From positions 1 through 64,000 of IMG/VR virus record IMGVR_UViG_3300031951_000003: a stretch of DNA of 64,000 bases. One strand, given 5' to 3'. Position 1 is the first letter of the stretch. The number at the start of each line of letters is the position of its first letter. Below the pieces are notes generated by a model, which saw only the letters and a program-made list of their open reading frames with translations, was not told where the DNA came from and did not search any database. Position numbers and translations under genes: made by a program. Below, one piece after another: positions 5,423-60,506 of this stretch.

Positions 5423-5429
5423 ATAAATA
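5423..5429 (-). promoter_or_regulatory. TATTTAT upstream element (putative phage late promoter)
   Basis: 5 nt before the collagen-like gene ATG. Confidence 0.65.
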
Positions 5430-5455
5430 TTTTCTATTAATCTTTTTTATTTGGT

Positions 5456-6943
5456 TTAACATGGTTGCCATAGTCCTCCGACAACAAATCCATCACTATC
5501 TATTTGCCAATATCCTGTGAGAGAGTCGGTGCTGTTGGTATACCAATAATTATTCCCGTTGAAAGGCGTATTGAATGAACTGTCTGCAAAGAATCTCGTT
5601 GCACTATACCAATCATTCGATGGACTGTAAATTGTTTGACCCAACGTTTGTGGGTCTATACATATTGGTTGTGTTGTTTCCCCTGATGAAACTAAGAATG
5701 ATGTAATTTCTTGTTGAGCACCAATTGGGTCACCATTTTGAGCAATTAATTCTTGACCATCTTGAGTTATAATTAAAATCTCAAATACGGATGGAGTTGC
5801 TGTTGGTGAAGGAGTAAACGAAGGGGTTGGTGTATTAGTTTCTGTTGGAGTTGGTGTGTTAGTTTCTGTTGGAGTTGGTGTGTTAGTTTCTGTTGGAGTA
5901 GGAGTCGGAGATATCAAACATCCGTTAGGGTCCGAACTTGTGATTAGACCTGCTCCGCCTGTAACTCTATACCAAGCAACACCGTTGGAATAGTATCCGT
6001 CAGGTGCTGGTGTTGTAAGAGCCGAATCAGTATATAAAGTTTCCCCAATGTTAGGTCCAGGTCCATCTCCAGGTCCACTGTAGAAGTTAGTTGGTGATGA
6101 GTAAAAATTACCACACGATGTTAATGAGCTAGATAAATCATAACCTAATGAATATTCCCAATATGCTCTTGAAGCTGTAGGTGTTGTTGTCGGTGTTGCG
6201 GTTGGAGTTTCAGTTTGCGTAGGTGTTTGTGTTGGAGTCTCAGTATTTGTTGGGGTTGGAGTCTCTGTAGGCGTCTCGCTTGGTGTTACAGATGGTGTTG
6301 GTGTGTTAGTTTCAGTTGGAGTTTGAGTTGGTGTCTCACCAGGTGTTGCGGTAGGTGATTCTGTAGGTGTTTGTGATGGGGTTTCGGTTGGAGTTCCCGT
6401 CTGTGTTGGTGTAGGAGTTTCAGAAGTAGAAGGGGTCGGTGTAGGAGTTGTTGTTGGTGTCTCCGTTTGTGTTGGGGTCGGCGATTCTGTTGCAGTTGGT
6501 GTTTGACCAGGGCTTGCAGTTATACTTGGAGTTGGTGTTTGTGTCTGAGTTTCAGTTGGAGTTTGTGTTGGAGTCTCTGAAGTTGTTGGAGTCTGTGTTG
6601 TTGTTGGTGTTTCTGTAGGTGTAGAATTAGGGGTTCCTGTATTTGTTGGTGTAGGTGTAAACGTAGGTGTTACAGTAGGAGTAGGTGTAGGTGTAGGGGT
6701 AACGCATTCAAATGTAATAACAACTCCGTTGAACATTTCGGTTCTTGTCTGTGCAGAGGCATAAAGAGTTGCGGCTGAAAGGTAGGTCGAAGTCCCATAA
6801 TAGATATCGAATGGACCTAAGGCATTAGAATTCTGAGATAATCTTACAATGTAAGTGACACATCCCGTAACCGAGACCTGTTGCGTAACTACTGTATTAC
6901 AACCTTCAGCAGTATTGACACAAAAAATATTATAAAGGGACAT
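5456..6943 (-). CDS. Pro/Thr-rich stalk virion/adhesin protein with two related small aromatic- and Cys-containing domains
   Basis: ORF track 495 aa. Long (PT)n/TETPT tracts separate a small N-terminal domain from the domains ...[28 protein letters not shown]... and ...[19 protein letters not shown]...YWQIDSDG. Confidence 0.75.
5826..5900. repeat. 24-bp tandem repeat (3 copies) encoding PTPTETNT
   Basis: Unit gttggagttggtgtgttagtttct repeated directly. Confidence 0.8.
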
Positions 6944-6957
6944 CCGCGGTTTTTTTA

Positions 6958-6964
6958 ATAAATA
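6958..6964 (-). promoter_or_regulatory. TATTTAT upstream element
   Basis: 14 nt before ATG 6943. Confidence 0.65.
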
Positions 6965-7015
6965 CCACGATTATCTATTTGAATATCTCGAAACGAAAAA
7001 TTATTAAATACTTTA

Positions 7016-7342
7016 TCATGTACAAATAATATTGAATCCACATACAGCATTTTGAATGTCTATATTTACAACACAACTCTCGAGCTCAACTGTAATATTG
7101 AAAGTACAACCAAATGTACAATCTAGTATTTTTACTGACTCACATCCATTTGCATCAACCAAACGTAACATGATTTCAGGTGCGGTCTGAAATATTGTAG
7201 GAATAGTTGTATTGTAATAAACAGTTGGTGGAACTCCACTAATTGTACCAAGTAAAAACTGATTATTTCCGTATATGTCGGATATAAAAGCTTGTATTGG
7301 AAAAGTGCCCCCTGTGATTTCTGTTATTCTTACCTGAACCAT
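7016..7342 (-). CDS. Small hypothetical structural protein (single beta-sandwich, SprB-like C-terminal motif)
   Basis: The ATG at 7342 overlaps the upstream stop (TAATG) and is preferred over the track's TTG at 7354. Motif LRLVDANGCE. Confidence 0.7.
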   Translation of the reverse strand: MVQVRITEITGGTFPIQAFISDIYGNNQFLLGTISGVPPTVYYNTTIPTIFQTAPEIMLRLVDANGCESVKILDCTFGCTFNITVELESCVVNIDIQNAVCGFNIICT

Positions 7343-9480: not shown

Positions 9481-9485
9481 TCAAT

Positions 9486-13372: not shown

Positions 13373-13388
13373 ATAAAATTATTTTTCT

Positions 13389-13395
13389 ATAAATA
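13389..13395 (-). promoter_or_regulatory. TATTTAT upstream element
   Basis: 16 nt before ATG 13372. Confidence 0.65.
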
Positions 13396-13397
13396 GT

Positions 13398-15433: not shown

Positions 15434-17114
15434 CTATCAAAGGTTTAATTGGTTCATCTACACCTAAAATAGATTCATTGTAATCTATTCCCTCAGGTAT
15501 TAATCTAAATACGGCAGATACAAAAGGGTAATGCGCCGTGTTAAAGAAAGGATAATCCACACCCCTGTTTGAACTATCTTTGAATCCATATGTGTATAGG
15601 TCTCTCCATCTGAATTCTCTGTCTTGGGTAGAATAAAAAGCCCAGCTTGGTATATTCTCAATCGCGTCGACATTTCCTGTTTCGATGTAATCTGAAAATA
15701 TTCTTATGGTCATAGGGATATGTGGCTCATAGTAAAAACCAGGTGAGTTCGTATTACTGTTATTTGTTGTTTGAAACACACTTTGATTGTATTTTATTTT
15801 TTGATAGTATTTTGATATGACCCTTTCGATTTGTTCATAATCATTCCACTCACAAAAATCACCATCAATAACATCTGCTCTTTTCAAGTCTAAATTATAA
15901 GTGAATGTCTTTGTTACACCACTTGTCAAAGTATATGCTGATGTTTGAATAGATGAGTTTGACTGTGTGTTATTCAAATCCCACCACGGATTAATATTTT
16001 TTGAAAGATTGAATTCCCATCCCTGTTTTATTCCGACACCATTATTAGGCTGATTGAAATAACCTGAATAACCTTTATTTATCACAGTTAGATTAATCTC
16101 GTTTAACGGTCTACCGTTGTTATCTTTTAGGGAAGCGAAATCCAAATCGTATGCGGACGTGAACGAATAAGCGTTACTACTTGTCTTCTGAGAAACCCTC
16201 GTGACTTTATTGGGAGTAATCGAACTGTATTCAAATTTTCTTTCTTCACCAAAAACATTTTTTTCAAAACCAGCTTTTGTTACAATGATATCGTCCAAAT
16301 TTGTCACAACCTTTAGTTTTTTGATGTAGTATTTCGATTTAGTCTCATTAAGATTATCTGGATTGATAACTCTTTTAAAAGTTCCTCTAGTTCCGTTGTT
16401 GAAAGTAGAGCCAGTGTATCCAACATTTAAAACATTGAAGATATAAGGGTCAGATTCAACTAATCCGTTACCTAAAGAATATACTTGGAAAATCTTTTCA
16501 TTCCTATATGTGAGTGATAGTTCGACATATTCATTAGGTAAAACTCCATGAGGAGCAATACATCTAAAACTTATTATGTTGTCACCATTTTGTTGTGAGT
16601 TAAATATTTCAAATGGAATTCCGTCTCCTGCAACCCAATTGATTGGTGTGTTATTAGAATAATATGTTAATTGTTTATTATATTGGTTTTCGTAAGGATA
16701 TGTTAGATAATATGTCCAATTGTAGGTATAAGCACTTTTAGATTTATATGGAAAATGTTGGTCTTTAACATCGGGTCTGTAGAAATCAAACTCATAAAAC
16801 TGAGGGAATCCTTTCCAAATTGTGCTGACCGTTGAAACCTCAGGGTTTACATAAAACAGATTATTTCTAAATGGAATGTATTCAGTTGTTCCTGTATAAG
16901 TGTTGGAATACAAATAACTAAGTTTGAATGTCGGTCTGAAGACTGTAGATTCCTGTCTCTCATCGTCATAAACCTGAGCTAAACTTATTGTTTGACTTCT
17001 ATCATATTCAGTAATTTCTTGTTGTTTTTCTTGTAAGGTCAAGGTGATTTCCTGGTCAACAAAAGGAGCACTTTGGAAAGTCAGACTACTCGGTATAATT
17101 TTATAGTTATTCAT
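15420..17114 (-). CDS. Hypothetical structural protein
   Basis: The ATG at 17114 (MNNYKII) overlaps the upstream stop and is preferred over the track start at 17162. Confidence 0.7.
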   Translation of the reverse strand: MNNYKIIPSSLTFQSAPFVDQEITLTLQEKQQEITEYDRSQTISLAQVYDDERQESTVFRPTFKLSYLYSNTYTGTTEYIPFRNNLFYVNPEVSTVSTIWKGFPQFYEFDFYRPDVKDQHFPYKSKSAYTYNWTYYLTYPYENQYNKQLTYYSNNTPINWVAGDGIPFEIFNSQQNGDNIISFRCIAPHGVLPNEYVELSLTYRNEKIFQVYSLGNGLVESDPYIFNVLNVGYTGSTFNNGTRGTFKRVINPDNLNETKSKYYIKKLKVVTNLDDIIVTKAGFEKNVFGEERKFEYSSITPNKVTRVSQKTSSNAYSFTSAYDLDFASLKDNNGRPLNEINLTVINKGYSGYFNQPNNGVGIKQGWEFNLSKNINPWWDLNNTQSNSSIQTSAYTLTSGVTKTFTYNLDLKRADVIDGDFCEWNDYEQIERVISKYYQKIKYNQSVFQTTNNSNTNSPGFYYEPHIPMTIRIFSDYIETGNVDAIENIPSWAFYSTQDREFRWRDLYTYGFKDSSNRGVDYPFFNTAHYPFVSAVFRLIPEGIDYNESILGVDEPIKPLIDGCE

Positions 17115-20100
17115 CTGCACTATATTTTGTCTTAAATTTATCCAAAGCAGACGCACCTGCAACTAATCCAAAGTAAAACTGGTTTGGAGCACCAATCATA
17201 AAATTGTTTGTCCAAGTTCCAGCCGTTGCAGAATATTGTTGGTTTTGGTTAACAGCAAAAATATAACCTCTTTGATATATGTCACTTACGTTGTTGTATG
17301 AACCACTGAAATAAGATGGTGCATTCGTAAATCTTCTACTCAAAGATTGATATTCGTAAGAGATAATACCATCTGATATGTTCGTTTTCCAATTATTTTT
17401 TTCAGTTCCAAAAATTGAATTACCGCCTTCTAAACCCCACTGATAAAAAGGAACTCTTTGTGATTTAATACCGAAAGGATATGTCAGTGCATTTGCGTTA
17501 GATGCTGGTCTGAAGTTAATAACCCCTGGTGAAATATAGTCTTTTATCTGTAAATCTGCAGTTGAGGATGAGAAGAATATTCCCATAACATTATTACCTG
17601 CGGTTTGTAAAACTACAACAGCATTGTTCGGGTCATTTGCATCAAAAGGATAAAATTCTGTGCTGAAAGGAACTATTCCAATTTCACTATTAATTGACAT
17701 CATTTGAACCAAGTCGGCATCCACCCTATTCTTAGGTTGAATAATTCCAACTGTCGATGACCTCGTGAATAAACTATTGATTGAGTTATCTCTCAATCCC
17801 AACATTTGTTGTAAGAAAGTCGCACTCGTGATTCTAGAAAGAACAAATAGGTTTACAATATCTGATGTGTCGGAGTAACTTGTAGGATTCAGATTTGACA
17901 TCACATAAGCCTTTGCGGATGCCTCCATTATAATTTCTTGGTAAAACGAATCCTTCATACCCAAATTTATGATTGTTGTTGGAAATAAAAGATTTCTCGA
18001 ATTAATTGAATATTGTGGCCCTAATGTATTTGCGGGGGAACCTATAAATCTCGAAGATGTTGAACCACTTAAAAATGGACTACTTCTAAAATAAAAATTG
18101 TTTGTATCACTATCAAAATAAGTTAACCTTGAAGGATACTTTGGTGCCAAAGGTTTATTGTTCAAATCAAAAAATACATCTATTTGGATTGGGAACATAA
18201 ATAAAGAACCGTTTATCCAATTATTCGTAAATGATTGAGACAAAACCCCTCTACACAAACCATAGTTAAATCGGAATCTATATGCCCACTCATTAAAATT
18301 TCTAATATCTTTTCCAATATCCAAAAGTGGTCTTCGTAAGAACTGGTAACATCCGCTTACTACTGCATCAGTTTCAGTGCATCCTGTATTCACTTTAAAT
18401 GTCGTTCCATTTCCCTCGTAACATTTGAGTGAAACTATTTGTGAACAAAGATTTAATGTATCTATAACGTTGGTGTAACTGTATTGTCCTACAATATCTG
18501 CGGTTGTTATGTCCGCACCTGTGCTGTAAGCATCCACTGAAATTGCACCTTCACCATACGCAGAGATTTGATAAATTGCAAAACCAATGTTTTGTTGTAA
18601 CAAAGCGGGATTCAATGTCCAAGTTCCACCATCCAAGTTATCTGAAGAGGGTAATCTGTCGGTTCTCATCACATTTAGAGTGTTAGTGGAAATATTCATT
18701 GGATTACCTGTAAATGATGGTAAGAACACATTTGTGTAATAGGTTATTTCTACATCTTTGGGTCTCCTTCCAGATTCTTGAACATAAAAGAAAGCTGCAC
18801 CAGAAATATCTTCAGCTGTATTATATTTTCCAACACGTTGTGAAGGTGTTGTTACAATAGATGAGTATGCACCATTATATGGGCTAGAAACGACTCCGTT
18901 TGAAAAATCTAATGAACCAGATGGATTAGTTGTTCTATCCAAACTACTATAATATCCCACGTTGAAAGTTGTGAATGCTGACCACTGTTTTCCTATTTCA
19001 GTCGTGTTATTTATACCACCCCTGAAGAAATGAGATGGGTAAAATATTTCAGATTGACCATTTTGTGTGAATGGTTGAACGCTCATTATATTGGAATTAA
19101 GTTTCTGGATTGGAATATTAAGTCTTGTTTCTGCGGTCAAGGTTAATGCATCAGGGTCATTGAAACCAAAAAGAACTCCTAAACCGTATTTGTTCACGTA
19201 GGTTGGTGAATACGGGTCAACACCTCTTTGTAAGATTGTGATATACTGATTTCCATAATCTTGGAAAATTTGTGAATAAGGAATTTCGTTGGTGTAATAT
19301 CCGTTGAGCCAACCAGTGTTGATACAAATACCAAGAATTTTAATGTGTTTCTGATTATTTCCAATAATAACCGTCCCTGAATTTACAATTTGCGGTAAAG
19401 ATTCATCTGGAGCTCCACCAAATAAGTTTATCGCTTGATTTATTGTTAGTGCAGTAATTACTTGATAATATTCGATATCCGCCGGATATGTATACCCCGT
19501 TATCTCGGAACCTCTATTTAATTGGTAGGTTGTTGTGAGGTTACTATAAGGGTTGTTAGGGTCACAATATCCCACATTATATGTTGATGGACCAGGATTA
19601 AGAGCCTGTCCATAAATACCACTTGTTTGTGGTGTATTTCCTGTGAAATTAAAGTTAACGTCGGTTGTATCTAAGGGGTTAACAAAACTTAACAATGTGC
19701 CAGTTTCAAGTTTGTCTGACAAAAAGATTGTAAGTGTATTATCCAAGTGATTAACCAAATTATTTGGTGAATTAAATGTAACTTTGATACGATTAACACC
19801 ATCAAAATATTTTTTTCTCGTGTTAAAAATATTAACTCTTTCACCTAAGGGGAGATAATTTGAGTAAGCGAAAAAATCAACAGGACAACCATCTATAAAA
19901 ATACTACCATCATCCCCTGAATCCATAACCTTGTATGAGTTTCTACTGAATGGGTCACCGTCATTTCCACCCGCAGCACTTGCGAATGCAAGTGCCACCG
20001 CATCTCTACTATCCTCATCGAACGACTGAACATAAGGGCTTGCTAATAATTTTTCATAATATTGAATTGAATCTGAGAATCTTGAGAGTAATCCACTTTG

Positions 20101-22161
20101 ACTTGATGTTAATGATTGGTCTTGAGATATATCTTTTGGTTTACACTCGCAACCTTGGCAGTCTGGATATGTTAATACCGGTAGGGATATAACTTTTATT
20201 TTCTGACCTCGGAAAATTTGGTATATTTTATTTATAGCAAAAATAGATAATCCATATTTTATTGAAATTGCTAAGTTTTTCCCTGCAATTGCTAAAGTAT
20301 CTTTTGCTTCTGTAGTTTTTTGACCTGCCAAAAATTTTAAAGCAGCACCAGCAATAGATGCAACTCCAGTTCCAACCAAGTTTGCACCAGCCGCAGTTAA
20401 CTTACCAGCTTCAATATAAAGTTTAATACCTTTAATAACACCTTTTCCGAAAAGGTATAAATGATATCCAACTAAAGCCGCAAATAAACCAATAAGGATA
20501 TTTTTCAAACCCAACAAAAGATTTAAAAAGAAGACTATAAAATGGAGTGCAATTAAAAGTGGGATTGAAACAATCTGAAGGAGTTGAAGTAAAAGTGAGA
20601 CAATAAAAAATAAAAAGTCAAAGTTTTTGAACCCTTCGTTTACCGGAAATTTATTCACTGTGTCAGAACATGAATCATCATCAATTTCTTTGATTCCTAT
20701 AAACCTTCCTCTACCCCCATCTTTATATTGGTCTATCAAACCTGAAACTGTATAAACTCTATTATATTCGAATTGATAAAATGTGTCTTCACAGTTTATC
20801 ATCTCATTAAGTTTTGTTGTTGCGTCCTGAACAGAAAACCCGTTAGTATAACCTGACCAATCTAGCCCAAAATAATAAGAACTTTTTAGTTGATTTCTTT
20901 GTTGTAAAGGAGGGTTAACATTAGGATTGTTTGGGTCAACCGCAGTGCTACTCCAACCATACTCTCTAACGTTTGGAACTAAAAAATACGGTCTTTTGAC
21001 AGATTCACTTAGACTATTTGATTGTTGCCATTTAATTTTAAATCTATATTTTCCCTTAGTGGGAATTCCAATCGTTGGGTCGTTTGATAGAATTTTTTCA
21101 CCAAACTCGTTTGTGACTAAATAATCCAAATTCATTGGGAGTTCTACCAACCATACCCCATTTTCGTCTATTAAATTTCCACTTTGTTCCAATCTGTATT
21201 CTTCAAGAATTGGATTGCCGCTCAAGTCAGTATTAATTGTTTGTCTTACTGCAAGTATTTGACCAGGTCCTGCAACAAGTGAACATAGGTTACCGAAATT
21301 ATCTCTCGGTTTACCACCCCTTATTGTTATAGAACCTAATTTCAAATCGGGTCTTAACCTAAACTTGTCAGGTGTGGAATAAACCGAACCCATGAAAACA
21401 GAAGTAGGCTGTATGTCAATGTTTGCATCATCCCTCAAATCAAAATCAAGTCGGTTGATTGCTATTTGACAAACATCAGGGTCACCCCATAAAGGACTAA
21501 CTTCAATTGTTCTATTCAAATTTACAATTTGAGGAAGAGAATTCAAATCAGTTGAGCTTCTAAATCTATTTCCCGCCACTTGTGATTCCGTTGCCCTTCC
21601 AATTCTAATTAAATCTTGTGGTGTCAATGAGAATTCACCCATGTCCGACAAATCAACGTCCATCACAAATTGTTGATTACCAACCGGAACTCCCATTATC
21701 ATGTAGTCCCCACTTTCGTTTGTTTTTGCGGTAAATTTGTAATACCTATCGTATAACTCAACAACCGTAGACGCGGTCAATGCATCAAGCCTACTTGGTA
21801 AAGTTCCTGTAGGATTGTGTCCGCTATGTGACCTTTCGTAAGGTAGGAGATTGTATCGATATCCATCTTCATTTTTGTCTTCAGGAGACTTATAAGGATA
21901 TATACTTGAAATGATAGGGTTCGATTGGTCTACCTCAGTGATAGGAACAAAAACCGAGACCCTTGCGTTGGGTAATCCAAATCCGTTATTAGCAGTAACT
22001 CTTCCTACAACCACACCGTAATCAGCACAAGCTCTTATATAAACATCCGTTTGTTGTATTGTCAAAGACAGAATTTCTAAAAATTCAAAGTCTTGGTCGA
22101 GTTGAACATTAATTGTTTTGTTTACACCTAATTCGGTTCTTATTCTATAGGATTGACCCAT
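17107..22161 (-). CDS. Large baseplate-cluster protein with an N-terminal carboxypeptidase-regulatory-like beta-sandwich and an internal hydrophobic helical segment
   Basis: 1684 aa from ATG 22161. Motif GVVVGRVTANNGFGLPNARVSV...TNESGDYMIMGVPVG. Hydrophobic run FDFLFFIVSLLLQLLQIVSIPLLIALHFIVFFLNLLLGL. Confidence 0.7.
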   Translation of the reverse strand: MGQSYRIRTELGVNKTINVQLDQDFEFLEILSLTIQQTDVYIRACADYGVVVGRVTANNGFGLPNARVSVFVPITEVDQSNPIISSIYPYKSPEDKNEDGYRYNLLPYERSHSGHNPTGTLPSRLDALTASTVVELYDRYYKFTAKTNESGDYMIMGVPVGNQQFVMDVDLSDMGEFSLTPQDLIRIGRATESQVAGNRFRSSTDLNSLPQIVNLNRTIEVSPLWGDPDVCQIAINRLDFDLRDDANIDIQPTSVFMGSVYSTPDKFRLRPDLKLGSITIRGGKPRDNFGNLCSLVAGPGQILAVRQTINTDLSGNPILEEYRLEQSGNLIDENGVWLVELPMNLDYLVTNEFGEKILSNDPTIGIPTKGKYRFKIKWQQSNSLSESVKRPYFLVPNVREYGWSSTAVDPNNPNVNPPLQQRNQLKSSYYFGLDWSGYTNGFSVQDATTKLNEMINCEDTFYQFEYNRVYTVSGLIDQYKDGGRGRFIGIKEIDDDSCSDTVNKFPVNEGFKNFDFLFFIVSLLLQLLQIVSIPLLIALHFIVFFLNLLLGLKNILIGLFAALVGYHLYLFGKGVIKGIKLYIEAGKLTAAGANLVGTGVASIAGAALKFLAGQKTTEAKDTLAIAGKNLAISIKYGLSIFAINKIYQIFRGQKIKVISLPVLTYPDCQGCECKPKDISQDQSLTSSQSGLLSRFSDSIQYYEKLLASPYVQSFDEDSRDAVALAFASAAGGNDGDPFSRNSYKVMDSGDDGSIFIDGCPVDFFAYSNYLPLGERVNIFNTRKKYFDGVNRIKVTFNSPNNLVNHLDNTLTIFLSDKLETGTLLSFVNPLDTTDVNFNFTGNTPQTSGIYGQALNPGPSTYNVGYCDPNNPYSNLTTTYQLNRGSEITGYTYPADIEYYQVITALTINQAINLFGGAPDESLPQIVNSGTVIIGNNQKHIKILGICINTGWLNGYYTNEIPYSQIFQDYGNQYITILQRGVDPYSPTYVNKYGLGVLFGFNDPDALTLTAETRLNIPIQKLNSNIMSVQPFTQNGQSEIFYPSHFFRGGINNTTEIGKQWSAFTTFNVGYYSSLDRTTNPSGSLDFSNGVVSSPYNGAYSSIVTTPSQRVGKYNTAEDISGAAFFYVQESGRRPKDVEITYYTNVFLPSFTGNPMNISTNTLNVMRTDRLPSSDNLDGGTWTLNPALLQQNIGFAIYQISAYGEGAISVDAYSTGADITTADIVGQYSYTNVIDTLNLCSQIVSLKCYEGNGTTFKVNTGCTETDAVVSGCYQFLRRPLLDIGKDIRNFNEWAYRFRFNYGLCRGVLSQSFTNNWINGSLFMFPIQIDVFFDLNNKPLAPKYPSRLTYFDSDTNNFYFRSSPFLSGSTSSRFIGSPANTLGPQYSINSRNLLFPTTIINLGMKDSFYQEIIMEASAKAYVMSNLNPTSYSDTSDIVNLFVLSRITSATFLQQMLGLRDNSINSLFTRSSTVGIIQPKNRVDADLVQMMSINSEIGIVPFSTEFYPFDANDPNNAVVVLQTAGNNVMGIFFSSSTADLQIKDYISPGVINFRPASNANALTYPFGIKSQRVPFYQWGLEGGNSIFGTEKNNWKTNISDGIISYEYQSLSRRFTNAPSYFSGSYNNVSDIYQRGYIFAVNQNQQYSATAGTWTNNFMIGAPNQFYFGLVAGASALDKFKTKYSADE

Positions 22162-22175
22162 CAACTAGTTTTTCA

Positions 22176-22182
22176 ATAAATA
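22176..22182 (-). promoter_or_regulatory. TATTTAT upstream element
   Basis: 14 nt before ATG 22161. Confidence 0.65.
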
Positions 22183-24575: not shown

Positions 24576-24582
24576 ATAAATA
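24576..24582 (-). promoter_or_regulatory. TATTTAT upstream element
   Basis: 5 nt before the gp25 ATG. Confidence 0.65.
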
Positions 24583-26672: not shown

Positions 26673-26702
26673 TTATCAAAAAATCGTCGATTTTTATGAT
26701 AA
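26673..26702. promoter_or_regulatory. Imperfect palindrome upstream of nrdJ overlapping the TATTTAT element
   Basis: ttatca-aaaaatcg-t-cgattttt-a-tgataa. Confidence 0.5.
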
Positions 26703-26705
26703 ATA
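26699..26705 (-). promoter_or_regulatory. TATTTAT upstream element
   Basis: 53 nt before the nrdJ ATG. Confidence 0.5.
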
Positions 26706-32363: not shown

Positions 32364-32392
32364 ATTATAATTGGGAAATCCCTATATGTCAA
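32364..32392 (-). promoter_or_regulatory. Perfect sigma70-consensus promoter for the SSB/recombination operon
   Basis: TTGACA (32392-32387), 17-nt spacer, TATAAT (32369-32364). Confidence 0.85.
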
Positions 32393-33336: not shown

Positions 33337-33343
33337 ATAAATA
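33337..33343 (-). promoter_or_regulatory. TATTTAT upstream element
   Basis: 13 nt before ATG 33323. Confidence 0.65.
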
Positions 33344-41042: not shown

Positions 41043-41355
41043 AATAAAAGAATTGGTTGTCTATTGCCGCTTTATAATCTTGTAATGATGGTATCAATGG
41101 AAATGGAATACTCAAAATTGCACCATCGAAAATATTATTTTCTAAACCCCCAAACTGAGGGTTGGCTTGTAATATCAACCAACCAAAAAATGGTGAGTTG
41201 TAATATTCTTGTGAGACTCTATCTAACCTACTTCTACCAACTTTATAAATGTAAGCCTTATCGGTTGGTTTTGAAGGCAATTGAACATAAGGGACAACTG
41301 TTTGTTCTCCATTAATGATAAATTGACTATATCTATTCCAATATGGATACGCCAT
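41032..41355 (-). CDS. P2 gpX / LysM-like baseplate protein
   Basis: RLDRVSQEYYNSPFFGWLILQANP...GAILSIP. Confidence 0.75.
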   Translation of the reverse strand: MAYPYWNRYSQFIINGEQTVVPYVQLPSKPTDKAYIYKVGRSRLDRVSQEYYNSPFFGWLILQANPQFGGLENNIFDGAILSIPFPLIPSLQDYKAAIDNQFFYYGR

Positions 41356-44300: not shown

Positions 44301-46376
44301 AGGATGGTCAACAACTATCTTCCAAGCCAAAGTCCCACCTCTACTTGTTGACTTATATGTATATATTGGCTCTGGTCTACCAAGGAACTCACTAGTGTTC
44401 CATGACGCAGATACGTTTTCATTAAAGGTAAGTCCATAAGGTGGGAACCACATAACCCTTCCTCCATTAGGTCCTCTCTCACAAACAGGTAAATCAGAGA
44501 CTGATGCTCCTGGTGTAGAAGAGGTTCTCCAAGCAAGATTTTCCAATGAGAACATGTATTTTTTTGCAAATGCGGTATTTGTAGTTCCTATTAAATTTGT
44601 AGAACTTTGACCACCTTCTTGTTTGTTTGGAGCAATGTTCAAATTATATGTGTTATCTAAAACTGAATCTACAAATCTTCTTCCATTAATTGTTATACCA
44701 TCTACCTTTTGTAAATCATTATATTGAAGATATGGAGTATCCTTAGCAAAAACTCTACAATATTCTGTTCCAACTTCCTGTCCTACAGCCCCTTCGTATC
44801 TATAAACTCTAGAACCCTTTGTCATTTCTTTATATCCGTCGTTGAAAACTTTGGATACTTGGTCTATGGCATTACCTACGTGTTGTAATCTTTTTCCTCC
44901 TTGTGGTTGACTGTCTATTAATCTTTGAGTGTCATCAAGAATTGAACCCTCTCTAAATCTTCTTTCAGTTGATTCTGTTGAGTTATAGGATGATGGTCTG
45001 AAATCTTCATCTTCTCTTGTCACCTCCCCACCAAGACCCACTCTCTTACCAGCATTTCCCTTGTATTTCGGTGAAACCCAAGTAAACCCACCTTCGATAC
45101 CACCACCGTCACTATACGTTGGTCCATTAGCACCTAATTTTACATCTTGACTAGGTCCTTCATAAAGTTGAGCTAACTCAGTTGGTCCAAAAACAGGAGA
45201 TTGTTGGACTACCCCAAACTCATTTACGGGTAATGCACCCGCAGGAGAAAAGACTTGTGATGGTTCTGATGTTCTTGAACCAACATAATAGTTACTATTG
45301 TCTGATAAACCACCAACAATTGCACCAGCGGCTCTGTCCAAGAAAGTTCTTTCGTAGTTCGGTTTGAATTTGTTAAAATCGATGTTGGCGAAAAGTCTAG
45401 ACTTTTGTCCTCCACCTGTGTTATTAAGGAAGAGTTGAGAACCTGATTGAGGGGCACCTAAAAGTCTATTGAAAAAGTTTCCAACAGCACTTCTTCTAAA
45501 TGCATTCTGTAGTTGTTGTATTGTTGTTGGCTGTCCTGAATTTATTGATGGGTCCCAATAAGAACCTGGGATTGGGGATACAGGTAATATACTTCCAGCA
45601 AGTCTGAGCGCAAAATCTGTTGCGGCTAATATTGGGTTACTTGGGGTTGTAATAGTCCAGTTTGGTTCCAACAATGGAACTCTTCCTGTTATTAAATTCA
45701 AAACATCGTTCCCGCTGTCAACATTGAATAGATTTACTCTACCTAATGTATTTTGTCTTATTTGTGCAGCAATTCTTTCCTCAAAAGATTTCCTCAAGGT
45801 TTGAGCTCCCAACTTGGCAATGAAGGAATCTTGACTCAATAACCCATTACTACCCAGTGGGTCTTTGGTTAATAGAATAGTAACAGGTCCATATAATGAA
45901 GGGACGAATGTTGTCGGGTAGGGTTGATTATTATATAATCTTGTTCCACCTATAACAAAATTAGGTTCAGTAATATATTCCCCACTGTCTAACAGAGCTT
46001 CAGAACCATTTGAATATGCGTTAACCGTTTTCCATCTCAACGATTCAGGTTCGGCCTGACCAAGTAATCTTGCATCTTGTTGACCTGGTCCATATTCTCC
46101 TTGATTTGACTTCGTATTAAGTAATCCTGTCGGGTCTGGTGCTTGTTTATATCCACCGTCTGACCCCCATTGGTTGAGAGGGTAGAGTCTGTTAGCAAAA
46201 CTAGGTTCATCAATAAGTTGGTCTGGACTGTCTTGAACAGAAGAATCGCTTTGGATATATTCCGTGTCTATCGGTTGTGACGGTCTATTAGGAGCCTTAG
46301 CATATGGTGTAAGGTTCCTTGTGAGTAACTTTTTTCTGAATCCTGAGGAAGATGAAAATTCTAATAAACTCGCCAT
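41355..46376 (-). CDS. Large tail-tube initiator-like protein (two gp48/CIS-tube-like domains flanking an OmpA-like domain)
   Basis: WFPPYGLTFNENVSASWN...FLGRPEPIYTY; FGAPPVLVLRIGDFYNTKII; IDSSCSAP..QSYNVELSKRRIES...GKGFGE. Follows the tape measure gene. Confidence 0.65.
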   Translation of the reverse strand: MASLLEFSSSSGFRKKLLTRNLTPYAKAPNRPSQPIDTEYIQSDSSVQDSPDQLIDEPSFANRLYPLNQWGSDGGYKQAPDPTGLLNTKSNQGEYGPGQQDARLLGQAEPESLRWKTVNAYSNGSEALLDSGEYITEPNFVIGGTRLYNNQPYPTTFVPSLYGPVTILLTKDPLGSNGLLSQDSFIAKLGAQTLRKSFEERIAAQIRQNTLGRVNLFNVDSGNDVLNLITGRVPLLEPNWTITTPSNPILAATDFALRLAGSILPVSPIPGSYWDPSINSGQPTTIQQLQNAFRRSAVGNFFNRLLGAPQSGSQLFLNNTGGGQKSRLFANIDFNKFKPNYERTFLDRAAGAIVGGLSDNSNYYVGSRTSEPSQVFSPAGALPVNEFGVVQQSPVFGPTELAQLYEGPSQDVKLGANGPTYSDGGGIEGGFTWVSPKYKGNAGKRVGLGGEVTREDEDFRPSSYNSTESTERRFREGSILDDTQRLIDSQPQGGKRLQHVGNAIDQVSKVFNDGYKEMTKGSRVYRYEGAVGQEVGTEYCRVFAKDTPYLQYNDLQKVDGITINGRRFVDSVLDNTYNLNIAPNKQEGGQSSTNLIGTTNTAFAKKYMFSLENLAWRTSSTPGASVSDLPVCERGPNGGRVMWFPPYGLTFNENVSASWNTSEFLGRPEPIYTYKSTSRGGTLAWKIVVDHPSVLNVIVNKVLANETNRTRVNSIIDSFFAGCRKYDLYELAKKYYTINPNDLYQLQEAITSKKLTREQIEWSKLEIQTGVDGGQGQDISQPGPTESELLKYKDVGLYFANDYPKKGDVTGYDQQKLIYDGQRAKYDTSADTKSFFDVVVDTNFKVAQKLIDDLVAKLKQTKGSITIVIDSSCSAPQTQSYNVELSKRRIESAQLFFNKNPKLSQYVSEGRLLVQAGKGFGESFISQPRKFEGPEPYDLSVKNLGNSYNCTDTDSSVVGGDIQVQAKDVFTPGAMACRRAYIYNIIDNTTDNTPEPVPTPQYTDVLVSNTVVTTTETEEISREWRRRDNITKRVIRSLLSECDYFETIKAETPMVFDNLKDKLKFFTPAFHSMTPEGLNSRLTFLQQCMRPGDTIPTIKEVNGSPVLQYNNAVNTTFGAPPVLVLRIGDFYNTKIIPESLSLQYEELDINPEGIGVQPMIANVSLNFKFVGGSGLKESVDRLQNALTFNYYANTEIYDDRADVTAQEDFLKVLDDEFLAMAVPPKPPAANQAAPNNGQNNNQTIGSILNRTNQPFGENGTISYSDFMVNFVNQTQTYFQNVVNKQITITSQYNNAVRQQWMAERNYTYGGTSVDTAPVSIYIFGKPNNVENRFNQIFANLEEDITNDDDQFINFISDTTKNLTPRVINAIKTNYSNVIKNKRGVFQNAVTQITQELVTLETQYIQSWSRANIITYDYTTGFAFDGFQSAKGDVTVYEISGLSEVDVSSTSATDTLDELVIDLQKVRDNISEFNDIIWATNSFVYSQDNLTYDGVMVYKTENGIADGAPSTDVVFEPFSKKDEFTNGNFKRQYMIFSDDILDDKKYQTFKQSIIGDVINNTALIGDSTADVSKIFDDFWIVKSKPLYIEENNITKGFLDSVAKNELKDFLIYTPFPKKNRILGFSTENVFPDPSLFDLEKSWIKSLAAQTNSSNDQATWNDDISGALISKAKLN

Positions 46377-46389
46377 CAATTATTTTTCT

Positions 46390-46396
46390 ATAAATA
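46390..46396 (-). promoter_or_regulatory. TATTTAT upstream element
   Basis: 13 nt before ATG 46376. Confidence 0.65.
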
Positions 46397-48279: not shown

Positions 48280-48286
48280 ATAAATA
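48280..48286 (-). promoter_or_regulatory. TATTTAT upstream element
   Basis: Directly after the terminator, 16 nt before the tape measure ATG. Confidence 0.65.
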
Positions 48287-48314
48287 CAAAAGGACTGATT
48301 TTTCAGTCCTTTTG
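48287..48314. terminator. Bidirectional-type terminator between the chaperone extension and the tape measure
   Basis: caaaaggactga-tttt-tcagtccttttg perfect 12-bp inverted repeat. Confidence 0.8.
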
Positions 48315-49185: not shown

Positions 49186-49195
49186 AAAAAAAAAA

Positions 49196-49778: not shown

Positions 49779-49785
49779 ATAAATA
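49779..49785 (-). promoter_or_regulatory. TATTTAT upstream element
   Basis: 34 nt before the tube ATG. Confidence 0.65.
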
Positions 49786-50667: not shown

Positions 50668-50678
50668 TTAGTATGGCT

Positions 50679-50710: not shown

Positions 50711-50711
50711 A

Positions 50712-53936: not shown

Positions 53937-53969
53937 TATTAAATTATTCTATGCAGATTTATTTTAATG

Positions 53970-53976
53970 ATAAATA
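53970..53976 (-). promoter_or_regulatory. TATTTAT upstream element
   Basis: 33 nt before the sheath ATG. Confidence 0.65.
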
Positions 53977-54055
53977 TTCTAATCTGAATGAAAAAACTTG
54001 ACTTTTGAATATCTATTTGTAAATGGTGAGAATAAATTCTACCTTTTTTCTACCT

Positions 54056-55254: not shown

Positions 55255-55255
55255 A

Positions 55256-55948: not shown

Positions 55949-55950
55949 AA

Positions 55951-56466: not shown

Positions 56467-56487
56467 AGTCAGCTGAACTTGTTTATA

Positions 56488-56516
56488 TTGATAAATACTT
56501 TTAAGTTTATTATATT
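56488..56516 (+). promoter_or_regulatory. sigma70-like promoter for the SET-SNF2 operon
   Basis: TTGATA, 17-nt spacer, TATATT, ending 8 nt before the ATG at 56525. Confidence 0.55.
56491..56497 (-). promoter_or_regulatory. TATTTAT upstream element
   Basis: 24 nt before the gp14-like ATG. Confidence 0.65.
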
Positions 56517-56524
56517 TAATCCAA

Positions 56525-56920
56525 ATGGAAATTCAAAGAAATACAAAACTACAAGTAAGAAAAAGTTCAATTCACGGTTGGGGGGTTTTCGCATGTGAAG
56601 ACATAAACGAGGGTGAGGTTATTGAAGAGTGTCCGATTCTTAGATTACCTGTTCAAAGAGGAGAAACAAACTACACCTTAATTGACTATACATTTGTATT
56701 TCCAAAAGGAGAGAATTGGCAAAACCACGTTATTGCTCTTGGATATGGTTCACTATATAACCATTCCGAAAACTATAACGCAACATGGGAAGACGATTTG
56801 GACAAAGACATTTTAAGATTTAAAGCAACAAAACCAATTTCGAAAGATGAGGAAGTCACAACTTATTATGGTGATGAAAGTTATTGGTCTGACGGTAGAA
56901 GTCACATTGAAGTAAAATGA
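56525..56920 (+). CDS. SET-domain protein (putative protein lysine methyltransferase)
   Basis: SSIHGWGVFA...I.EGEVIEE, GSLYNHS..YN, ATKPISKDEEVTTYYG. Confidence 0.9.
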   Translation: MEIQRNTKLQVRKSSIHGWGVFACEDINEGEVIEECPILRLPVQRGETNYTLIDYTFVFPKGENWQNHVIALGYGSLYNHSENYNATWEDDLDKDILRFKATKPISKDEEVTTYYGDESYWSDGRSHIEVK

Positions 56921-58677: not shown

Positions 58678-58682
58678 CATAG

Positions 58683-58895
58683 ATGGAGAAAGTAACTAAT
58701 CACCAAGGAGTTGAATTGAGAGTTGGTGATAGAATTAAAATTATATCAGACAAATTACATTCAAAATTACTAGCTAACGTTGACCTAAATGAAGAGGTTG
58801 TCATAACAAGTTTTTCAGAAAACGGAAAAATTATATATCATCATAATACATTAGCCCTACCAACCAACAGTGACATTTATGTTAAAATAAATTAA
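58683..58895 (+). CDS. Small hypothetical protein (SH3/KOW-like)
   Basis: 70-aa ORF containing LRVGDRIKI. Starts 5 nt after the SNF2 stop. Confidence 0.55.
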   Translation: MEKVTNHQGVELRVGDRIKIISDKLHSKLLANVDLNEEVVITSFSENGKIIYHHNTLALPTNSDIYVKIN

Positions 58896-58925
58896 AGTCA
58901 ATCAAACCTTAAAACAATTCTGAGT

Positions 58926-58932
58926 TATTTAT
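58926..58932 (+). promoter_or_regulatory. TATTTAT upstream element
   Basis: 22 nt before the SOD ATG, on the + strand like the gene. Confidence 0.65.
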
Positions 58933-58954
58933 ATAAAACGAATAACTCGCCAAT

Positions 58955-60493
58955 ATGAAAAAAATAGAAGAAAGAATTCAACAAATTGAAAAACAAATTA
59001 CCGAAAACCATATCGAAACAGAAAAACAATTGTTGATTACAGAAATGAAAAAAATTGGAATAGAAAAACTACCCTATTCTTATTCAGCCCTCAAAGGATT
59101 CATCGACGCAGAAACGATGAATTTCCACTACAACAAACACTATAAGGGATATGTAGATAAATTAAATGCCGCCCTGTCAAAGAAAAAACATGGAGATTTA
59201 GACTTAGAAAAAATTGTCAAAAACATTAGTCGATACGACCAAGTAGTAAGGAACAACGCTGGAGGAGCATTCAATCACGCACTTTTTTGGAATATGTTGT
59301 CTCCAACACCAAAAAAATTAACAGGGGAATTGTATAAAAAAATTACCAAAGAATACGGTAGTTTCAATCTATTCAAAAAGAAATTTGAAACTGTTGCAAA
59401 GGATAGATTTGGCTCAGGTTGGGTATGGTTAATTTTAACCTCAAAAAATACTTTGAAAATAATGTCGACACCAAATCAAGACAATCCACTTATGAATGTT
59501 ATCGAAGGTGGAGGTTTCCCTCTATTAGGTTTGGACCTTTGGGAACACGCCTACTATTTGAAATACAGAAATAAGAGAGACGAATACATTTCAAATTTTT
59601 GGAAGGTGGTCAATTGGGATTTTGTTCAGAAACTTTATGAAATGAAAGTTGAAACAAAACTACTAGAGTCGAACAAATTTCAAGGAATAATTACTGAATC
59701 AAAAGAACCACAATTCTGTAATCCAAAAGAAGTATTGTTCTATAGAGACTTGATTAATAATTACGCAATCAAAAAAAGATATCAGGAGGGAGTATCCTAC
59801 GTTCTAAAAAAAGTATTTTCACATTTTTGGGTTGAGGGTAATACTGAAGAGATGTCAGGATTTTATGGTGTAGAATCACCCGAGGGTAGGTCTATACTCA
59901 ATAACCTTAATACAAATTTCAATACATTTTGTTTATTGGTAAAAGCAGTAAACAAACAGATTGAATTAATTGGAAGGTCAGAAAAGAAGTTTGATTTTTC
60001 AAAAAAAGAAAAAAGAACTCTAAAGGAAACAACTAGATTTATTTCAGCATTGGACCACTTCAGAAACGAAATCTTTACAGAGAATAACGAAGACTTTATC
60101 AATATAATCAAAGTCCTTAAAAAACTTTGGGATAGGGGTCAAAAGTCTGAAGACAACGCAATTAAAAAAATAGAAGACTATTTTGATGGTAATGCTAAAA
60201 TTGAAAAGATTGGTTCACATGGTGGAAAACAAGACGCCTTCAAAGGTATTGATGTAAATGTGATTTTAGATGGAAAAAAGTTTTCTGCACAGGTTAAACC
60301 ATTCTCTAATGTTTCAATAATCGAGGACAGAGTTAAACTTTTGGATACAGGAAATGTTAAGCATTACGAAGTCGATTGGTATATTTTTATTAATCCTAAA
60401 ACAAATAAGATACTTATATTCAAAAACGACCCTATAAGTGATAAAAACCAATATGTCTTCAACGTTAGTTCACTACTACACGAAATAGAATAA
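58955..60493 (+). CDS. sod: Fe/Mn superoxide dismutase fused to a C-terminal PD-(D/E)xK-like domain
   Basis: SOD motifs LPYSYSAL, HYNKHYKGY, NAGGAFNH, RFGSGW, NQDNP, LDLWEHAYYLKY. C-terminal GQKSED / GIDV / AQVKP. Confidence 0.88.
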   Translation: MKKIEERIQQIEKQITENHIETEKQLLITEMKKIGIEKLPYSYSALKGFIDAETMNFHYNKHYKGYVDKLNAALSKKKHGDLDLEKIVKNISRYDQVVRNNAGGAFNHALFWNMLSPTPKKLTGELYKKITKEYGSFNLFKKKFETVAKDRFGSGWVWLILTSKNTLKIMSTPNQDNPLMNVIEGGGFPLLGLDLWEHAYYLKYRNKRDEYISNFWKVVNWDFVQKLYEMKVETKLLESNKFQGIITESKEPQFCNPKEVLFYRDLINNYAIKKRYQEGVSYVLKKVFSHFWVEGNTEEMSGFYGVESPEGRSILNNLNTNFNTFCLLVKAVNKQIELIGRSEKKFDFSKKEKRTLKETTRFISALDHFRNEIFTENNEDFINIIKVLKKLWDRGQKSEDNAIKKIEDYFDGNAKIEKIGSHGGKQDAFKGIDVNVILDGKKFSAQVKPFSNVSIIEDRVKLLDTGNVKHYEVDWYIFINPKTNKILIFKNDPISDKNQYVFNVSSLLHEIE

Positions 60494-60499
60494 TAAAGA

Positions 60500-60506
60500 T
60501 ATTTAT
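60500..60506 (+). promoter_or_regulatory. TATTTAT upstream element
   Basis: 5 nt before the gp13-like ATG, on the + strand like the gene. Confidence 0.65.

What the first reader, a model, noticed from the sequence alone, without database searches (positions are those of the whole stretch)
5423..60506. Oriented TATTTAT element before 13 genes: an inverted T4-late-like promoter
Seen: TATTTAT lies on the coding strand 5-53 nt upstream of the starts at 5417, 6943, 13372, 22161, 24570, 26645, 33323, 46376, 48263, 49744, 53936 and 56466 (- strand) and 58955 and 60512 (+ strand). This is 14 sites counting nrdJ, 13 excluding it. It flips strand with the genes. TATTTAA variants precede 28159 and 49185. 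It often follows a terminator. Eight copies read TATTTATA. Established: this is the exact reverse complement of the T4 gp55-dependent late promoter TATAAATA, which lies in the sense orientation in T4-like phages. Inference: this lineage uses its own late promoter, and presumably a divergent sigma factor or RNAP, with a -10-only element. I cannot confirm whether this has been described.
Basis: partly seen in the sequence, partly recalled or inferred. Interest (0 to 1): 0.75.

Follow-up and report, generated by a model that had tools for sequence, protein, structure and literature searches.

The report
Phage-specific TATTTAT promoter and its sigma
A 317-kb freshwater jumbo phage marks about 115 of its genes, including all virion and lysis genes that could be annotated, with an invariant, oriented TATTTAT box that looks like a -10-only promoter read by an unannotated phage sigma factor resembling T4 gp55; about half the boxes sit so close to the ATG that the mRNAs should have no leader.

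Summary
The window belongs to a 317,210-bp jumbo myovirus. Genome-wide, TATTTAT is the most strand-biased intergenic 7-mer: 71 sense against 6 antisense, with about 12 expected. All seven positions are invariant and there is no -35 element. Of 194 copies, 60 are followed 4-6 nt later by an ATG that opens a long ORF, against none for the reverse word. This predicts leaderless mRNAs.

The phage has no detectable RNA polymerase but encodes two sigma factors. One is a 248-aa divergent sigma, outside the window. Its best structural match in the PDB is T4 gp55 (Z 10.9).

The box is conserved between that sigma gene and the next gene in 6 of 9 distant lineages (P about 1e-7). One is a 52% GC contig, where it is the only copy. 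Another is the cultured Microcystis phage Mel-JY01, which lacks any canonical sigma.

The "inverted T4 promoter" framing does not. Read in the same orientation, TATTTATA matches TATAAATA at 6 of 8 positions. "Late" timing and the sigma-to-box link are inferred, not shown.

The parts
5423..5429 (-). TATTTAT box, 5 nt before the ATG (5417) of the collagen-repeat tail-fibre gene. The spacing is of the leaderless type.
6958..6964 (-). TATTTAT box, 14 nt before the start (6943) of a 495-aa gene.
13389..13395 (-). TATTTAT box, 16 nt before the start (13372) of a 302-aa gene. An A-rich leader (AGAAAAATAATTTTAT) follows the box.
22176..22182 (-). TATTTAT box, 11-14 nt before the start (22164 TTG or 22161 ATG) of a 1685-aa gene with no family match.
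24576..24582 (-). TATTTAT box, 5 nt before the ATG (24570) of a 156-aa gene that heads the baseplate-wedge block. The spacing is of the leaderless type.
26699..26705 (-). TATTTAT box, 53 nt before the ribonucleotide reductase gene (start 26645). This is the most distant site in the window and the weakest one there by position.
33337..33343 (-). TATTTAT box, 13 nt before a 74-aa ORF (start 33323).
46390..46396 (-). TATTTAT box, 10-13 nt before the start (46379 or 46376) of the 1674-aa gene. The 2562-aa gene follows in the same block.
48280..48286 (-). TATTTAT box, 16 nt before a 616-aa gene (start 48263), directly after a terminator-like hairpin.
48292..48309 (-). Hairpin GGACTG-AAAAAT-CAGTCC followed by TTTT, five bases upstream of the box at 48280-48286. 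Together they form a terminator-promoter junction. Coordinates were read from the printed sequence.
   Evidence: sequence read directly
49779..49785 (-). TATTTAT box, 34 nt before the tail-tube gene (start 49744).
53970..53976 (-). TATTTAT box, 33 nt before the tail-sheath gene (start 53936). AATATTTAT is invariant in about 75 relatives, while the 14 nt just upstream vary.
56491..56497 (-). TATTTAT box, 24 nt before a 171-aa gene (start 56466), in a divergent intergenic region.
58926..58932 (+). TATTTAT box on the + strand, 22 nt before the Fe/Mn superoxide-dismutase-domain protein gene (start 58955).
60500..60506 (+). TATTTAT box on the + strand, 5 nt before the ATG (60512) of a gene like a head-tail adaptor. 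The spacing is of the leaderless type.

Best explanation
TATTTAT (fuller form V-TATTTAT-W) is the -10-type core element of a phage-specific promoter class with no -35 element.

Proposed mechanism (inferred): host core RNA polymerase is redirected to these sites by a phage-encoded 248-aa divergent sigma factor. Its gene lies outside the window, at G1 90057-90803. Its N-terminal domain is a sigma-2 domain closest in structure to T4 gp55. It also carries a weakly sigma-4-like C-terminal domain.

Transcription should start about 5 nt downstream of the 8-bp box. This is the geometry of the -12..-5 box of flavobacterial sigma-A promoters and close to that of T4 late promoters. For about half of the roughly 115 sites the first transcribed base would then be the A of the ATG, giving leaderless mRNAs. 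Most of the rest would have 5-12-nt A-rich leaders.

The regulon covers all annotated virion and lysis genes plus some replication and many unknown genes. A second, smaller set of promoters of the Bacteroidota host type (TTTG-N18-21-TAnnTTTG) precedes small ORFs and tRNA arrays and is the likely early class.

Shown: the existence, orientation, invariance, placement and conservation of the box; the absence of a -35 element; the sigma fold; the co-occurrence of box and sigma.

Inferred: that this sigma reads the box, where transcription starts, and the timing.
For: Box statistics:
- 71 sense against 6 antisense copies in tandem intergenic regions, with 12.3 +/- 3.6 expected.
- It is the top strand-biased 7-mer.
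- Every one-mismatch word loses the bias, and the T4 word TATAAATA is 4 sense against 38 antisense.
- There is no information upstream of the box.

Annotation-free spacing: 22, 27 and 11 copies are followed by an ORF-opening ATG at 4, 5 and 6 nt, against 0 of 194 for the reverse word. A second hump lies at 12-16 nt.

Promoter rather than RNA signal:
- Six divergent intergenic regions carry outward-facing pairs of boxes, one of them only 33 nt long.
- No gene junction shorter than 8 nt can hold the box (148 junctions), yet those genes must still be translated.
- In Mel-JY01 the box lies 30-45 nt upstream of the ATG, with GGAG-type ribosome sites in between.

Downstream genes that could be annotated: two tail fibres, baseplate, sheath, tube, portal, adaptor, a virion protein and an endolysin.

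Conservation:
- The box is invariant before the sheath gene in about 75 relatives, with variable flanks.
- It is the top biased 7-mer in relatives whose sigma is 59-79% identical.

The sigma:
- Its only PDB sequence hit is gp55, E = 0.15; pairwise BLASTP gives 2e-4.
- A family profile hits only sigma factors, and Foldseek hits are all sigma factors.
- An exhaustive structural search ranks T4 gp55 first: Z 10.9, rmsd 2.5 A over 96 residues.
- The nearest Atlas clusters are auto-named 'putative RNA polymerase sigma factor'.

Link between box and sigma:
- The box sits between the sigma gene and the next ORF in 6 of 9 independent lineages with 30-54% sigma identity, P about 1e-7. In a 52.5% GC contig it is the only copy in 9,953 bp.
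- Mel-JY01 has the divergent sigma and the box bias (24:8; ATATTTAT 17:3) but no Sigma70_r2 or r4 match.

No RNA polymerase beta, beta' or T7-type genes were found in the complete genome.
Against: - There are no transcription start sites. The only RNA data (two freshwater metatranscriptomes, kept as contigs) are too thin to show 5' ends.
- Sequence similarity of the sigma to gp55 is marginal (E 0.08-0.15), and Z values near 11 can arise among helical folds (note).
- The sigma has a sigma-4-like domain although the promoters lack a -35 element.
- Three of nine distant lineages lack the box at the conserved junction. One of them (sigma 39% identical, GC 53%) has only one copy in 20 kb, antisense and upstream of no called gene.
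- After ORF starts that my caller had over-extended are set aside, roughly 25-30 sense copies remain inside genes. The 7-mer alone may therefore not be sufficient.
- The box also precedes non-late genes, so 'late' is not established.
- No gp45-type sliding clamp was detected, so T4-style coupling to replication is unsupported.
Confidence: 0.7

Rival explanations
1. The box is a promoter, but it is read by the host primary sigma factor or by the phage's second sigma, the 265-aa SigA-like protein at G1 287994-288791, not by the gp55-like protein.
For: - The SigA-like sigma has intact regions 1.2, 2 and 4 and strong similarity to primary sigma factors.
- TATTTATW shares TA at -12/-11 and T at -8 with the flavobacterial -7 box TAnnTTTG, which spans -12..-5 (PMC9723704).
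- The same 4-nt spacing to the ATG is seen at host-type promoters in this genome.
Against: - The box has no -33 TTTG, and the TTTG half of the host box is replaced by an invariant TAT.
- A separate class with the full host consensus exists in the same genome.
- None of the six sigma motifs found in Flavobacterium psychrophilum resembles TATTTAT.
- Mel-JY01 has the box bias and the gp55-like sigma but no canonical sigma-70 region 2 or 4. Its reported host is a cyanobacterium, so the same box is used across different host phyla.
Confidence: 0.12
2. The element acts at the RNA level. UAUUUAU would be a translation-initiation enhancer standing where a Shine-Dalgarno sequence would be, in a host that does not use such sequences, or an endoribonuclease processing site that frees downstream cistrons.
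For: - In 60 genes the box ends 4-6 nt before the ATG, which is the usual Shine-Dalgarno position.
- Only 18 of 399 genes have a Shine-Dalgarno-like core.
- The element is oriented with the mRNA.
Against: - Spacing is bimodal and ranges up to 53 nt.
- In Mel-JY01 the box lies 30-45 nt upstream, with GGAG ribosome sites between it and the ATG.
- It is absent from the 148 tightly packed intra-operon junctions, whose genes must still be translated.
- Outward-facing pairs in short divergent intergenic regions (33-52 nt) leave no room for another promoter upstream of the box.
- A strictly invariant 7-mer is unlike ribosome-binding signals.
Confidence: 0.07
3. The box is the binding site of a phage DNA-binding regulator (an activator or repressor) that overlaps promoters whose real core elements are degenerate.
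For: - Invariant short words are typical of regulator sites.
- A conserved small ORF (121-146 aa) and a large ORF of unknown function always follow the sigma gene and could be such factors.
Against: - No second conserved element that could serve as a core promoter is present within 45 nt on either side.
- The box is asymmetric and single, not a dyad or a repeat.
- Its fixed distance to the ATG in leaderless-type sites matches a -10 position.
Confidence: 0.08

Closest known systems
Bacteriophage T4 late promoters (TATAAATA) with sigma gp55, co-activator gp33 and sliding clamp gp45
   Same: - An 8-bp, -10-only element with no -35 element.
- It stands before virion and lysis genes.
- It is read (here by inference) by a small phage sigma whose sigma-2 domain is the best structural match to gp55.
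- In the same orientation the two words agree at 6 of 8 positions.
- The phage has T4-like sheath, tube, baseplate, portal, UvsX-like and single-strand-binding-protein genes.
   Different: - The central two bases are TT, not AA, and the T4 word itself is avoided (4 sense against 38 antisense).
- The sigma is 248 aa and has an extra C-terminal sigma-4-like domain, where T4 uses a separate protein (gp33) on the beta flap (PMC7892883).
- No gp45-type clamp was detected.
- About half of the boxes are placed for leaderless mRNAs, which is not a T4 feature (my knowledge).
Bacteroidota sigma-A promoters (-33 TTTG, -7 TAnnTTTG)
   Same: - The same position relative to the inferred start (-12..-5).
- TA at the 5' end and T at -8.
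- True host-type promoters occur in the same genome with the same 4-nt spacing to the ATG.
   Different: - No -33 element.
- TTTG is replaced by an invariant TAT plus A/T.
- The box is also used by a phage reported on a cyanobacterium.
Other phage-encoded sigma cascades (Bacillus phage SPO1 gp28 and gp33/34)
   Same: A phage sigma replaces the host sigma to switch the temporal class (established knowledge; PMC13401047 abstract).
   Different: SPO1 promoters have both -35 and -10 elements (my knowledge, not tested here). There is no sequence relationship to those sigmas in my searches.

Membership tests
T4-type late promoter (gp55-dependent) | The 8-bp word TATAAATA on the non-template strand, centred near -10 | tested here: not met
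   The word here is TATTTAT(A/T). TATAAATA is 4 sense against 38 antisense in intergenic regions. Identity in the same orientation is 6 of 8.
T4-type late promoter (gp55-dependent) | No -35 element | tested here: met
   Information content is at most 0.16 bit at every position from -45 to -2 across 88 aligned sites.
T4-type late promoter (gp55-dependent) | Precedes late (virion, lysis) genes | tested here: met
   It precedes tail fibres, baseplate, sheath, tube, portal, adaptor, a virion protein and an endolysin. It also precedes ribonucleotide reductase, DNA polymerase and many unknown ORFs. Timing was not measured.
T4-type late promoter (gp55-dependent) | Activation through a sliding clamp (gp45) and co-activator (gp33) | tested here: inconclusive
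   Pfam DNA_PPF (PF02916) finds nothing in G1 or Mel-JY01. The small ORF after the sigma gene has no PDB or Pfam match. Divergent homologues cannot be excluded.
Sigma-70 family sigma factor (the 248-aa protein) | A sigma-2 domain (regions 2.1-2.4) | tested here: met
   A profile of 51 homologues hits SigA region 2 at E = 0.002 and nothing but sigma factors. Structural matches at Z 8-11 are all sigma-2 domains. Sigma70_r2 scores 13 bits, below the cut-off.
Sigma-70 family sigma factor (the 248-aa protein) | A sigma-4 domain (helix-turn-helix that binds the beta flap and the -35 element) | tested here: inconclusive
   Residues 155-248 align to region 4 of sigma-H, sigma-E and SigA at only Z 5.2-5.9. 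There is no Pfam r4 or r4_2 match.
Sigma-70 family sigma factor (the 248-aa protein) | Binds core RNA polymerase and confers promoter specificity | not testable with these tools
   This needs biochemistry.
T4 gp55 family | Detectable sequence homology to gp55 | tested here: inconclusive
   phmmer E = 0.15, the only PDB hit. Pairwise BLASTP 2e-4. Profile E = 0.08, weaker than to SigA. No PHROG match.
T4 gp55 family | Architecture: sigma-2 homology domain plus helix-loop-helix plus C-terminal clamp-binding tail, about 185 aa, no sigma-4 | tested here: not met
   The protein has 248 aa and a folded C-terminal four-helix domain. The clamp-binding motif was not examined.
Bacteroidota sigma-A promoter | -33 TTTG and -7 TAnnTTTG | tested here: not met
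   There is no upstream element. Positions 5-8 are an invariant TAT plus A/T.
Shine-Dalgarno-like translation signal | A narrow, single spacing to the start codon, present at internal cistrons | tested here: not met
   Spacing is bimodal, from 4 to 53 nt. The box is absent from 148 tight junctions. It lies 30-45 nt away in Mel-JY01.

The most novel reading that the evidence does not exclude
The 248-aa protein founds a large, so far unnamed family of phage sigma factors: 1,146 clusters at 50% identity, with no Pfam or PHROG model. In it a gp55-type sigma-2 domain is still fused to a sigma-4-like domain. This would be the undivided relative of the T4 gp55 plus gp33 arrangement. The family has kept one cognate word, TATTTAT, across phages of different host phyla and from 28 to 52% GC. 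In the freshwater jumbo clade it is combined with a genome-wide leaderless-mRNA strategy suited to hosts that lack Shine-Dalgarno sequences.
Probability: 0.35. Interest if true: 0.75.

Novelty: new variant of a known kind. Interest (0 to 1): 0.62.

Why it matters
- It would give a promoter and sigma pair for a very abundant, mostly uncultivated group of freshwater jumbo phages. The sigma search returned thousands of near-identical proteins and 1,146 clusters at 50% identity.
- It allows operon and regulon prediction directly from sequence in these genomes.
- It offers a natural comparison with T4. A gp55-like sigma-2 domain that reads TATTTATA instead of TATAAATA bears on how sigma domain 2 selects the central bases of the -10 element.
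- A gp55-like domain still joined to a sigma-4-like domain bears on how the T4 gp55/gp33 split arose.
- The predicted leaderless design covers about 60 genes. Flavobacterium psychrophilum has only 5.5% leaderless mRNAs, so this would be an unusual translation strategy for a phage.
- Mel-JY01 is cultured, so all of this is testable.

Tried and rejected
- RNA evidence. Two freshwater metatranscriptome runs hold reads of the sheath and tube genes, but only as single-read contigs. There was no 5'-end information.
- Host identification through the SigA-like sigma. The scan of bacterial genomes returned only 24-38% identical hits from unrelated phyla. The Atlas gave viral clusters. The Bacteroidota host is therefore only inferred from promoter type, the near absence of Shine-Dalgarno cores and a BACON domain in one relative.
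- A sigma-70-type class (TTGACA-N17-TATAAT). There is one perfect copy and a weak sense bias (22 of 233 against 6 of 167 at up to 2 mismatches). This is not enough to call a class.
- TATTTAA and all other one-mismatch variants were rejected as promoter variants.
- Phage RNA polymerase. No beta, beta' or T7-like match was found. The giant ORFs of 1,674-2,562 aa have no Pfam or PHROG match. An unrecognisable polymerase cannot be formally excluded.
- gp45 clamp and gp33. Neither was found.
- Literature. No paper in the library links TATTTAT to a phage promoter, and none mentions Mel-JY01.
- Complex prediction was not used, because it gives no verdict for jobs that include DNA.

Full report
**1. 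What the window is**

The window is bases 417-64416 of a 105,599-bp IMG/VR viral contig. A 317,210-bp contig (G1), rated 100% complete by CheckV, is 100% identical to it over 101,471 bp. Its two ends break inside the collagen-repeat tail-fibre gene. I therefore analysed G1 as the complete genome; window position = G1 position + 3712.

The window carries a myovirus structural module on the - strand:
- a collagen-repeat tail fibre, baseplate wedge and hub, tail tube and a 1,074-aa sheath;
- three giant ORFs with no family match;
- an inserted block of replication genes: ribonucleotide reductase, DnaB-like helicase, UvsX-like recombinase and single-strand-binding protein.

The nearest GenBank phage is Microcystis phage Mel-JY01, with 30% sheath identity. 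Hundreds of relatives occur in freshwater metagenomes.

**2. The observation**

Eight read TATTTATA.

The window-wide count is not enriched (27 against 22.4 expected). However, 14 of the 27 copies lie in the roughly 2% of the window that is non-coding, and all 14 are in sense orientation.

Genome-wide:
- There are 194 copies, 98 of them in the 5.2% of the genome that is intergenic.
- In tandem intergenic regions there are 71 sense and 6 antisense copies, with 12.3 +/- 3.6 expected from a second-order Markov model.
- TATTTAT is the most strand-biased intergenic 7-mer.
- All seven positions are invariant. No one-mismatch word, TATTTAA included (10 against 7), keeps a sense bias that terminator T-runs do not explain.
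- The flanks prefer A/G/C before the box and A/T after it. No position from -45 to -2 carries information, so there is no -35 element.

An annotation-free test confirms this. Of the 194 copies, 22, 27 and 11 are followed at exactly 4, 5 and 6 nt by an ATG that opens an ORF of at least 50 codons. The figure is 0 of 194 for the reverse-complement word. A second hump lies at 12-16 nt. About 20 copies that my crude ORF caller had placed 'inside genes' turned out to be such sites upstream of the true ATG. The genome therefore has about 115 sites.

**3. Promoter or something else**

Several features fit a core promoter and fit an RNA-level signal poorly:
- Six divergent intergenic regions hold outward-facing pairs of boxes. 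One of these regions is only 33 nt long.
- The 148 gene junctions shorter than 8 nt lack the box, although those genes must be translated.
- Thirteen sites directly follow a hairpin plus T-run.
- Before the sheath gene, AATATTTAT is invariant in about 75 relatives, while the 14 nt upstream vary freely.
- In Mel-JY01 the box lies 30-45 nt upstream of the ATG, with GGAG-type ribosome sites in between.

Downstream genes that could be annotated are overwhelmingly virion or lysis genes: two tail fibres, baseplate, sheath, tube, portal, adaptor, a virion protein and an endolysin. The box also precedes ribonucleotide reductase (53 nt), DNA polymerase (64 nt), a superoxide-dismutase-domain protein and an array of small ORFs at G1 188-214 kb. 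'Late' is therefore plausible but not shown.

**4. Geometry and leaderless mRNAs**

In Flavobacterium psychrophilum the sigma-A box TAnnTTTG spans -12 to -5, and only 5.5% of mRNAs are leaderless (PMC9723704).

This genome also contains promoters with the full Bacteroidota consensus, TTTG-N18-21-TAnnTTTG. About 14 are strict and 34 allow one mismatch. Nine end exactly 4 nt before an ATG. They precede small ORFs and the tRNA arrays.

With the same geometry, the 8-bp box TATTTATW followed by 3-5 nt puts the first transcribed base at the A of the ATG. Only 18 of 399 genes have a Shine-Dalgarno-like core.

I infer a host from the Bacteroidota, or at least one with such expression signals, and a largely leaderless late transcriptome. 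Neither inference is proven. Relatives with 59-79% sigma identity show the same bimodal spacing. Mel-JY01 does not.

**5. Who reads the box**

The complete genome has no detectable RNA polymerase beta, beta' or T7-type gene. It encodes two sigma factors.

The first is a 265-aa SigA-like protein with regions 1.2, 2 and 4.

The second is a 248-aa protein at G1 90057-90803, outside the window:
- It has no Pfam or PHROG match.
- Its only PDB sequence hit is T4 gp55, E = 0.15; pairwise BLASTP gives 2e-4.
- A profile of 51 homologues hits only sigma factors: SigA region 2 at E = 0.002 and gp55 at E = 0.08.
- Its AlphaFold model has mean pLDDT 89.8. It matches only sigma factors in Foldseek.
- In an exhaustive search of 48,161 PDB chains, T4 gp55 ranks first (Z 10.9, 2.5 A over 96 residues), followed by other sigma-2 domains. 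Residues 155-248 are weakly sigma-4-like, at Z 5.2-5.9.
- Atlas neighbours are auto-named 'putative RNA polymerase sigma factor'.

**6. Linking sigma and box**

The sigma gene sits in a conserved cassette: glycosyltransferase, sigma, a small ORF of 121-146 aa, then a large ORF. The cassette is found from 30% to 100% sigma identity.

TATTTAT lies between the sigma gene and the small ORF in this phage and in 6 of 9 independent distant lineages. One is a 52.5% GC contig, where it is the only copy on either strand in 9,953 bp. Another is Mel-JY01. The composition-matched chance probability is about 1e-7.

Mel-JY01 is the only GenBank phage with a homologue. It shows the intergenic bias genome-wide (24:8; ATATTTAT 17:3), yet has no Sigma70_r2 or r4 match at all. 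The box therefore travels with the gp55-like sigma, not with the SigA-like one, and it does so across hosts reported from different phyla.

One lineage with 39% sigma identity and 53% GC lacks the box and shows a recurrent AAACGAC instead. This would fit co-evolution, but I did not follow it up.

**7. Relation to T4**

T4's late element TATAAATA is on the non-template strand. It is read by gp55 (a sigma-2 homology domain plus a helix-loop-helix), with gp33 on the beta flap and the gp45 clamp (PMC7892883).

But sigma reads one strand, so 'inverted' has no mechanistic content. In the same orientation the two words are identical at 6 of 8 positions (TAT-AA-ATA against TAT-TT-ATA). That fits a related sigma-2 domain with altered reading of the two central bases.

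Differences from T4:
- a fused sigma-4-like domain;
- no detectable gp45-type clamp;
- no recognisable gp33;
- the leaderless placement of about half the boxes.

**8. Verdict**

The feature is real and strongly non-random. It is best explained as the -10-only promoter of a phage sigma regulon (confidence 0.7).

It is a new variant of a known kind. Phage-encoded sigma factors with their own late promoters are classical. This word, this sigma family and the leaderless architecture appear undescribed. I found no paper, there is no family model, and GenBank annotates the protein as 'hypothetical protein'.

Transcription start sites, timing and the sigma-DNA specificity remain to be shown. RNA data available here were too thin.

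Noticed in passing
G1 (complete genome), e.g. 157594-157624(-), 213007-213038(-), 226338-226368(-), 258492-258523(-), 298724-298755(-); none in the window's intergenic regions: A second promoter class matches the Bacteroidota consensus TTTG-N18-21-TAnnTTTG. Nine copies end exactly 4 nt before an ATG, again a leaderless geometry. They precede small ORFs and the tRNA arrays, so they are the likely early, host-sigma class.
   Followed up: partly
window 32364-32392 (-): A perfect TTGACA-N17-TATAAT lies 25 nt upstream of the single-strand-binding-protein gene. It is the only perfect sigma-70 consensus in an intergenic region of the 317-kb genome. It could be a target of the phage's own SigA-like sigma.
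   Followed up: partly
G1 90057-93301 (+), i.e. L085:1315-2446 and onward; outside the window: A conserved cassette (glycosyltransferase, divergent sigma, a 121-146-aa ORF, a 470-700-aa ORF) persists from 30% to 100% sigma identity. The two downstream proteins have no Pfam, PHROG or PDB match and could be sigma partners.
   Followed up: partly
window 58955-60493 (+): A 512-aa protein whose N-terminal half is a complete Fe/Mn superoxide dismutase (both Pfam domains). Its gene has its own TATTTAT box.
   Followed up: no
window 53991-54006 (-): AAAAGT(C/A)AAGTTTTTT, 14 nt upstream of the sheath-gene box, is conserved in about 75 relatives although the spacer between the two is not. It may be an upstream element or a regulator site specific to this strong promoter.
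   Followed up: no
G1 188,600-214,300 (-), outside the window: An array of about 45 small genes. Roughly 25 have their own TATTTAT box, and many also have their own hairpin terminator. Several share an N-terminal pattern such as MKYIITESQL, so they look like a paralogous family of unknown function.
   Followed up: no
G1 121,730-137,260 (L092) and 157,683-157,771 (L093), outside the window: 24 tRNA genes and a tmRNA gene (tag AEEATVVA) were found in the two 20-kb stretches scanned, which is nearly a full decoding set.
   Followed up: no
window 3-5417 (-) and both ends of G1: The collagen-repeat tail-fibre gene (1,805+ aa, Pfam Collagen E = 1e-219) is where independent assemblies break. A second collagen-repeat fibre gene lies at G1 268820-271444.
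   Followed up: no
L208:1-20732 (relative, sigma 39% identical, GC 53%): This lineage has only one TATTTAT in 20 kb, antisense and upstream of no called gene. It shows AAACGAC-like words 8-12 nt upstream of several start codons, plus TAnnTTTG boxes 5 nt before ATGs. It also has a BACON-domain protein, which hints at a Bacteroidota host.
   Followed up: no
window 33354-41042, 41355-46379, 17107-22164 (-): Three giant ORFs (2,562, 1,674 and 1,685 aa) in the structural module have no Pfam or PHROG match at all.
   Followed up: no
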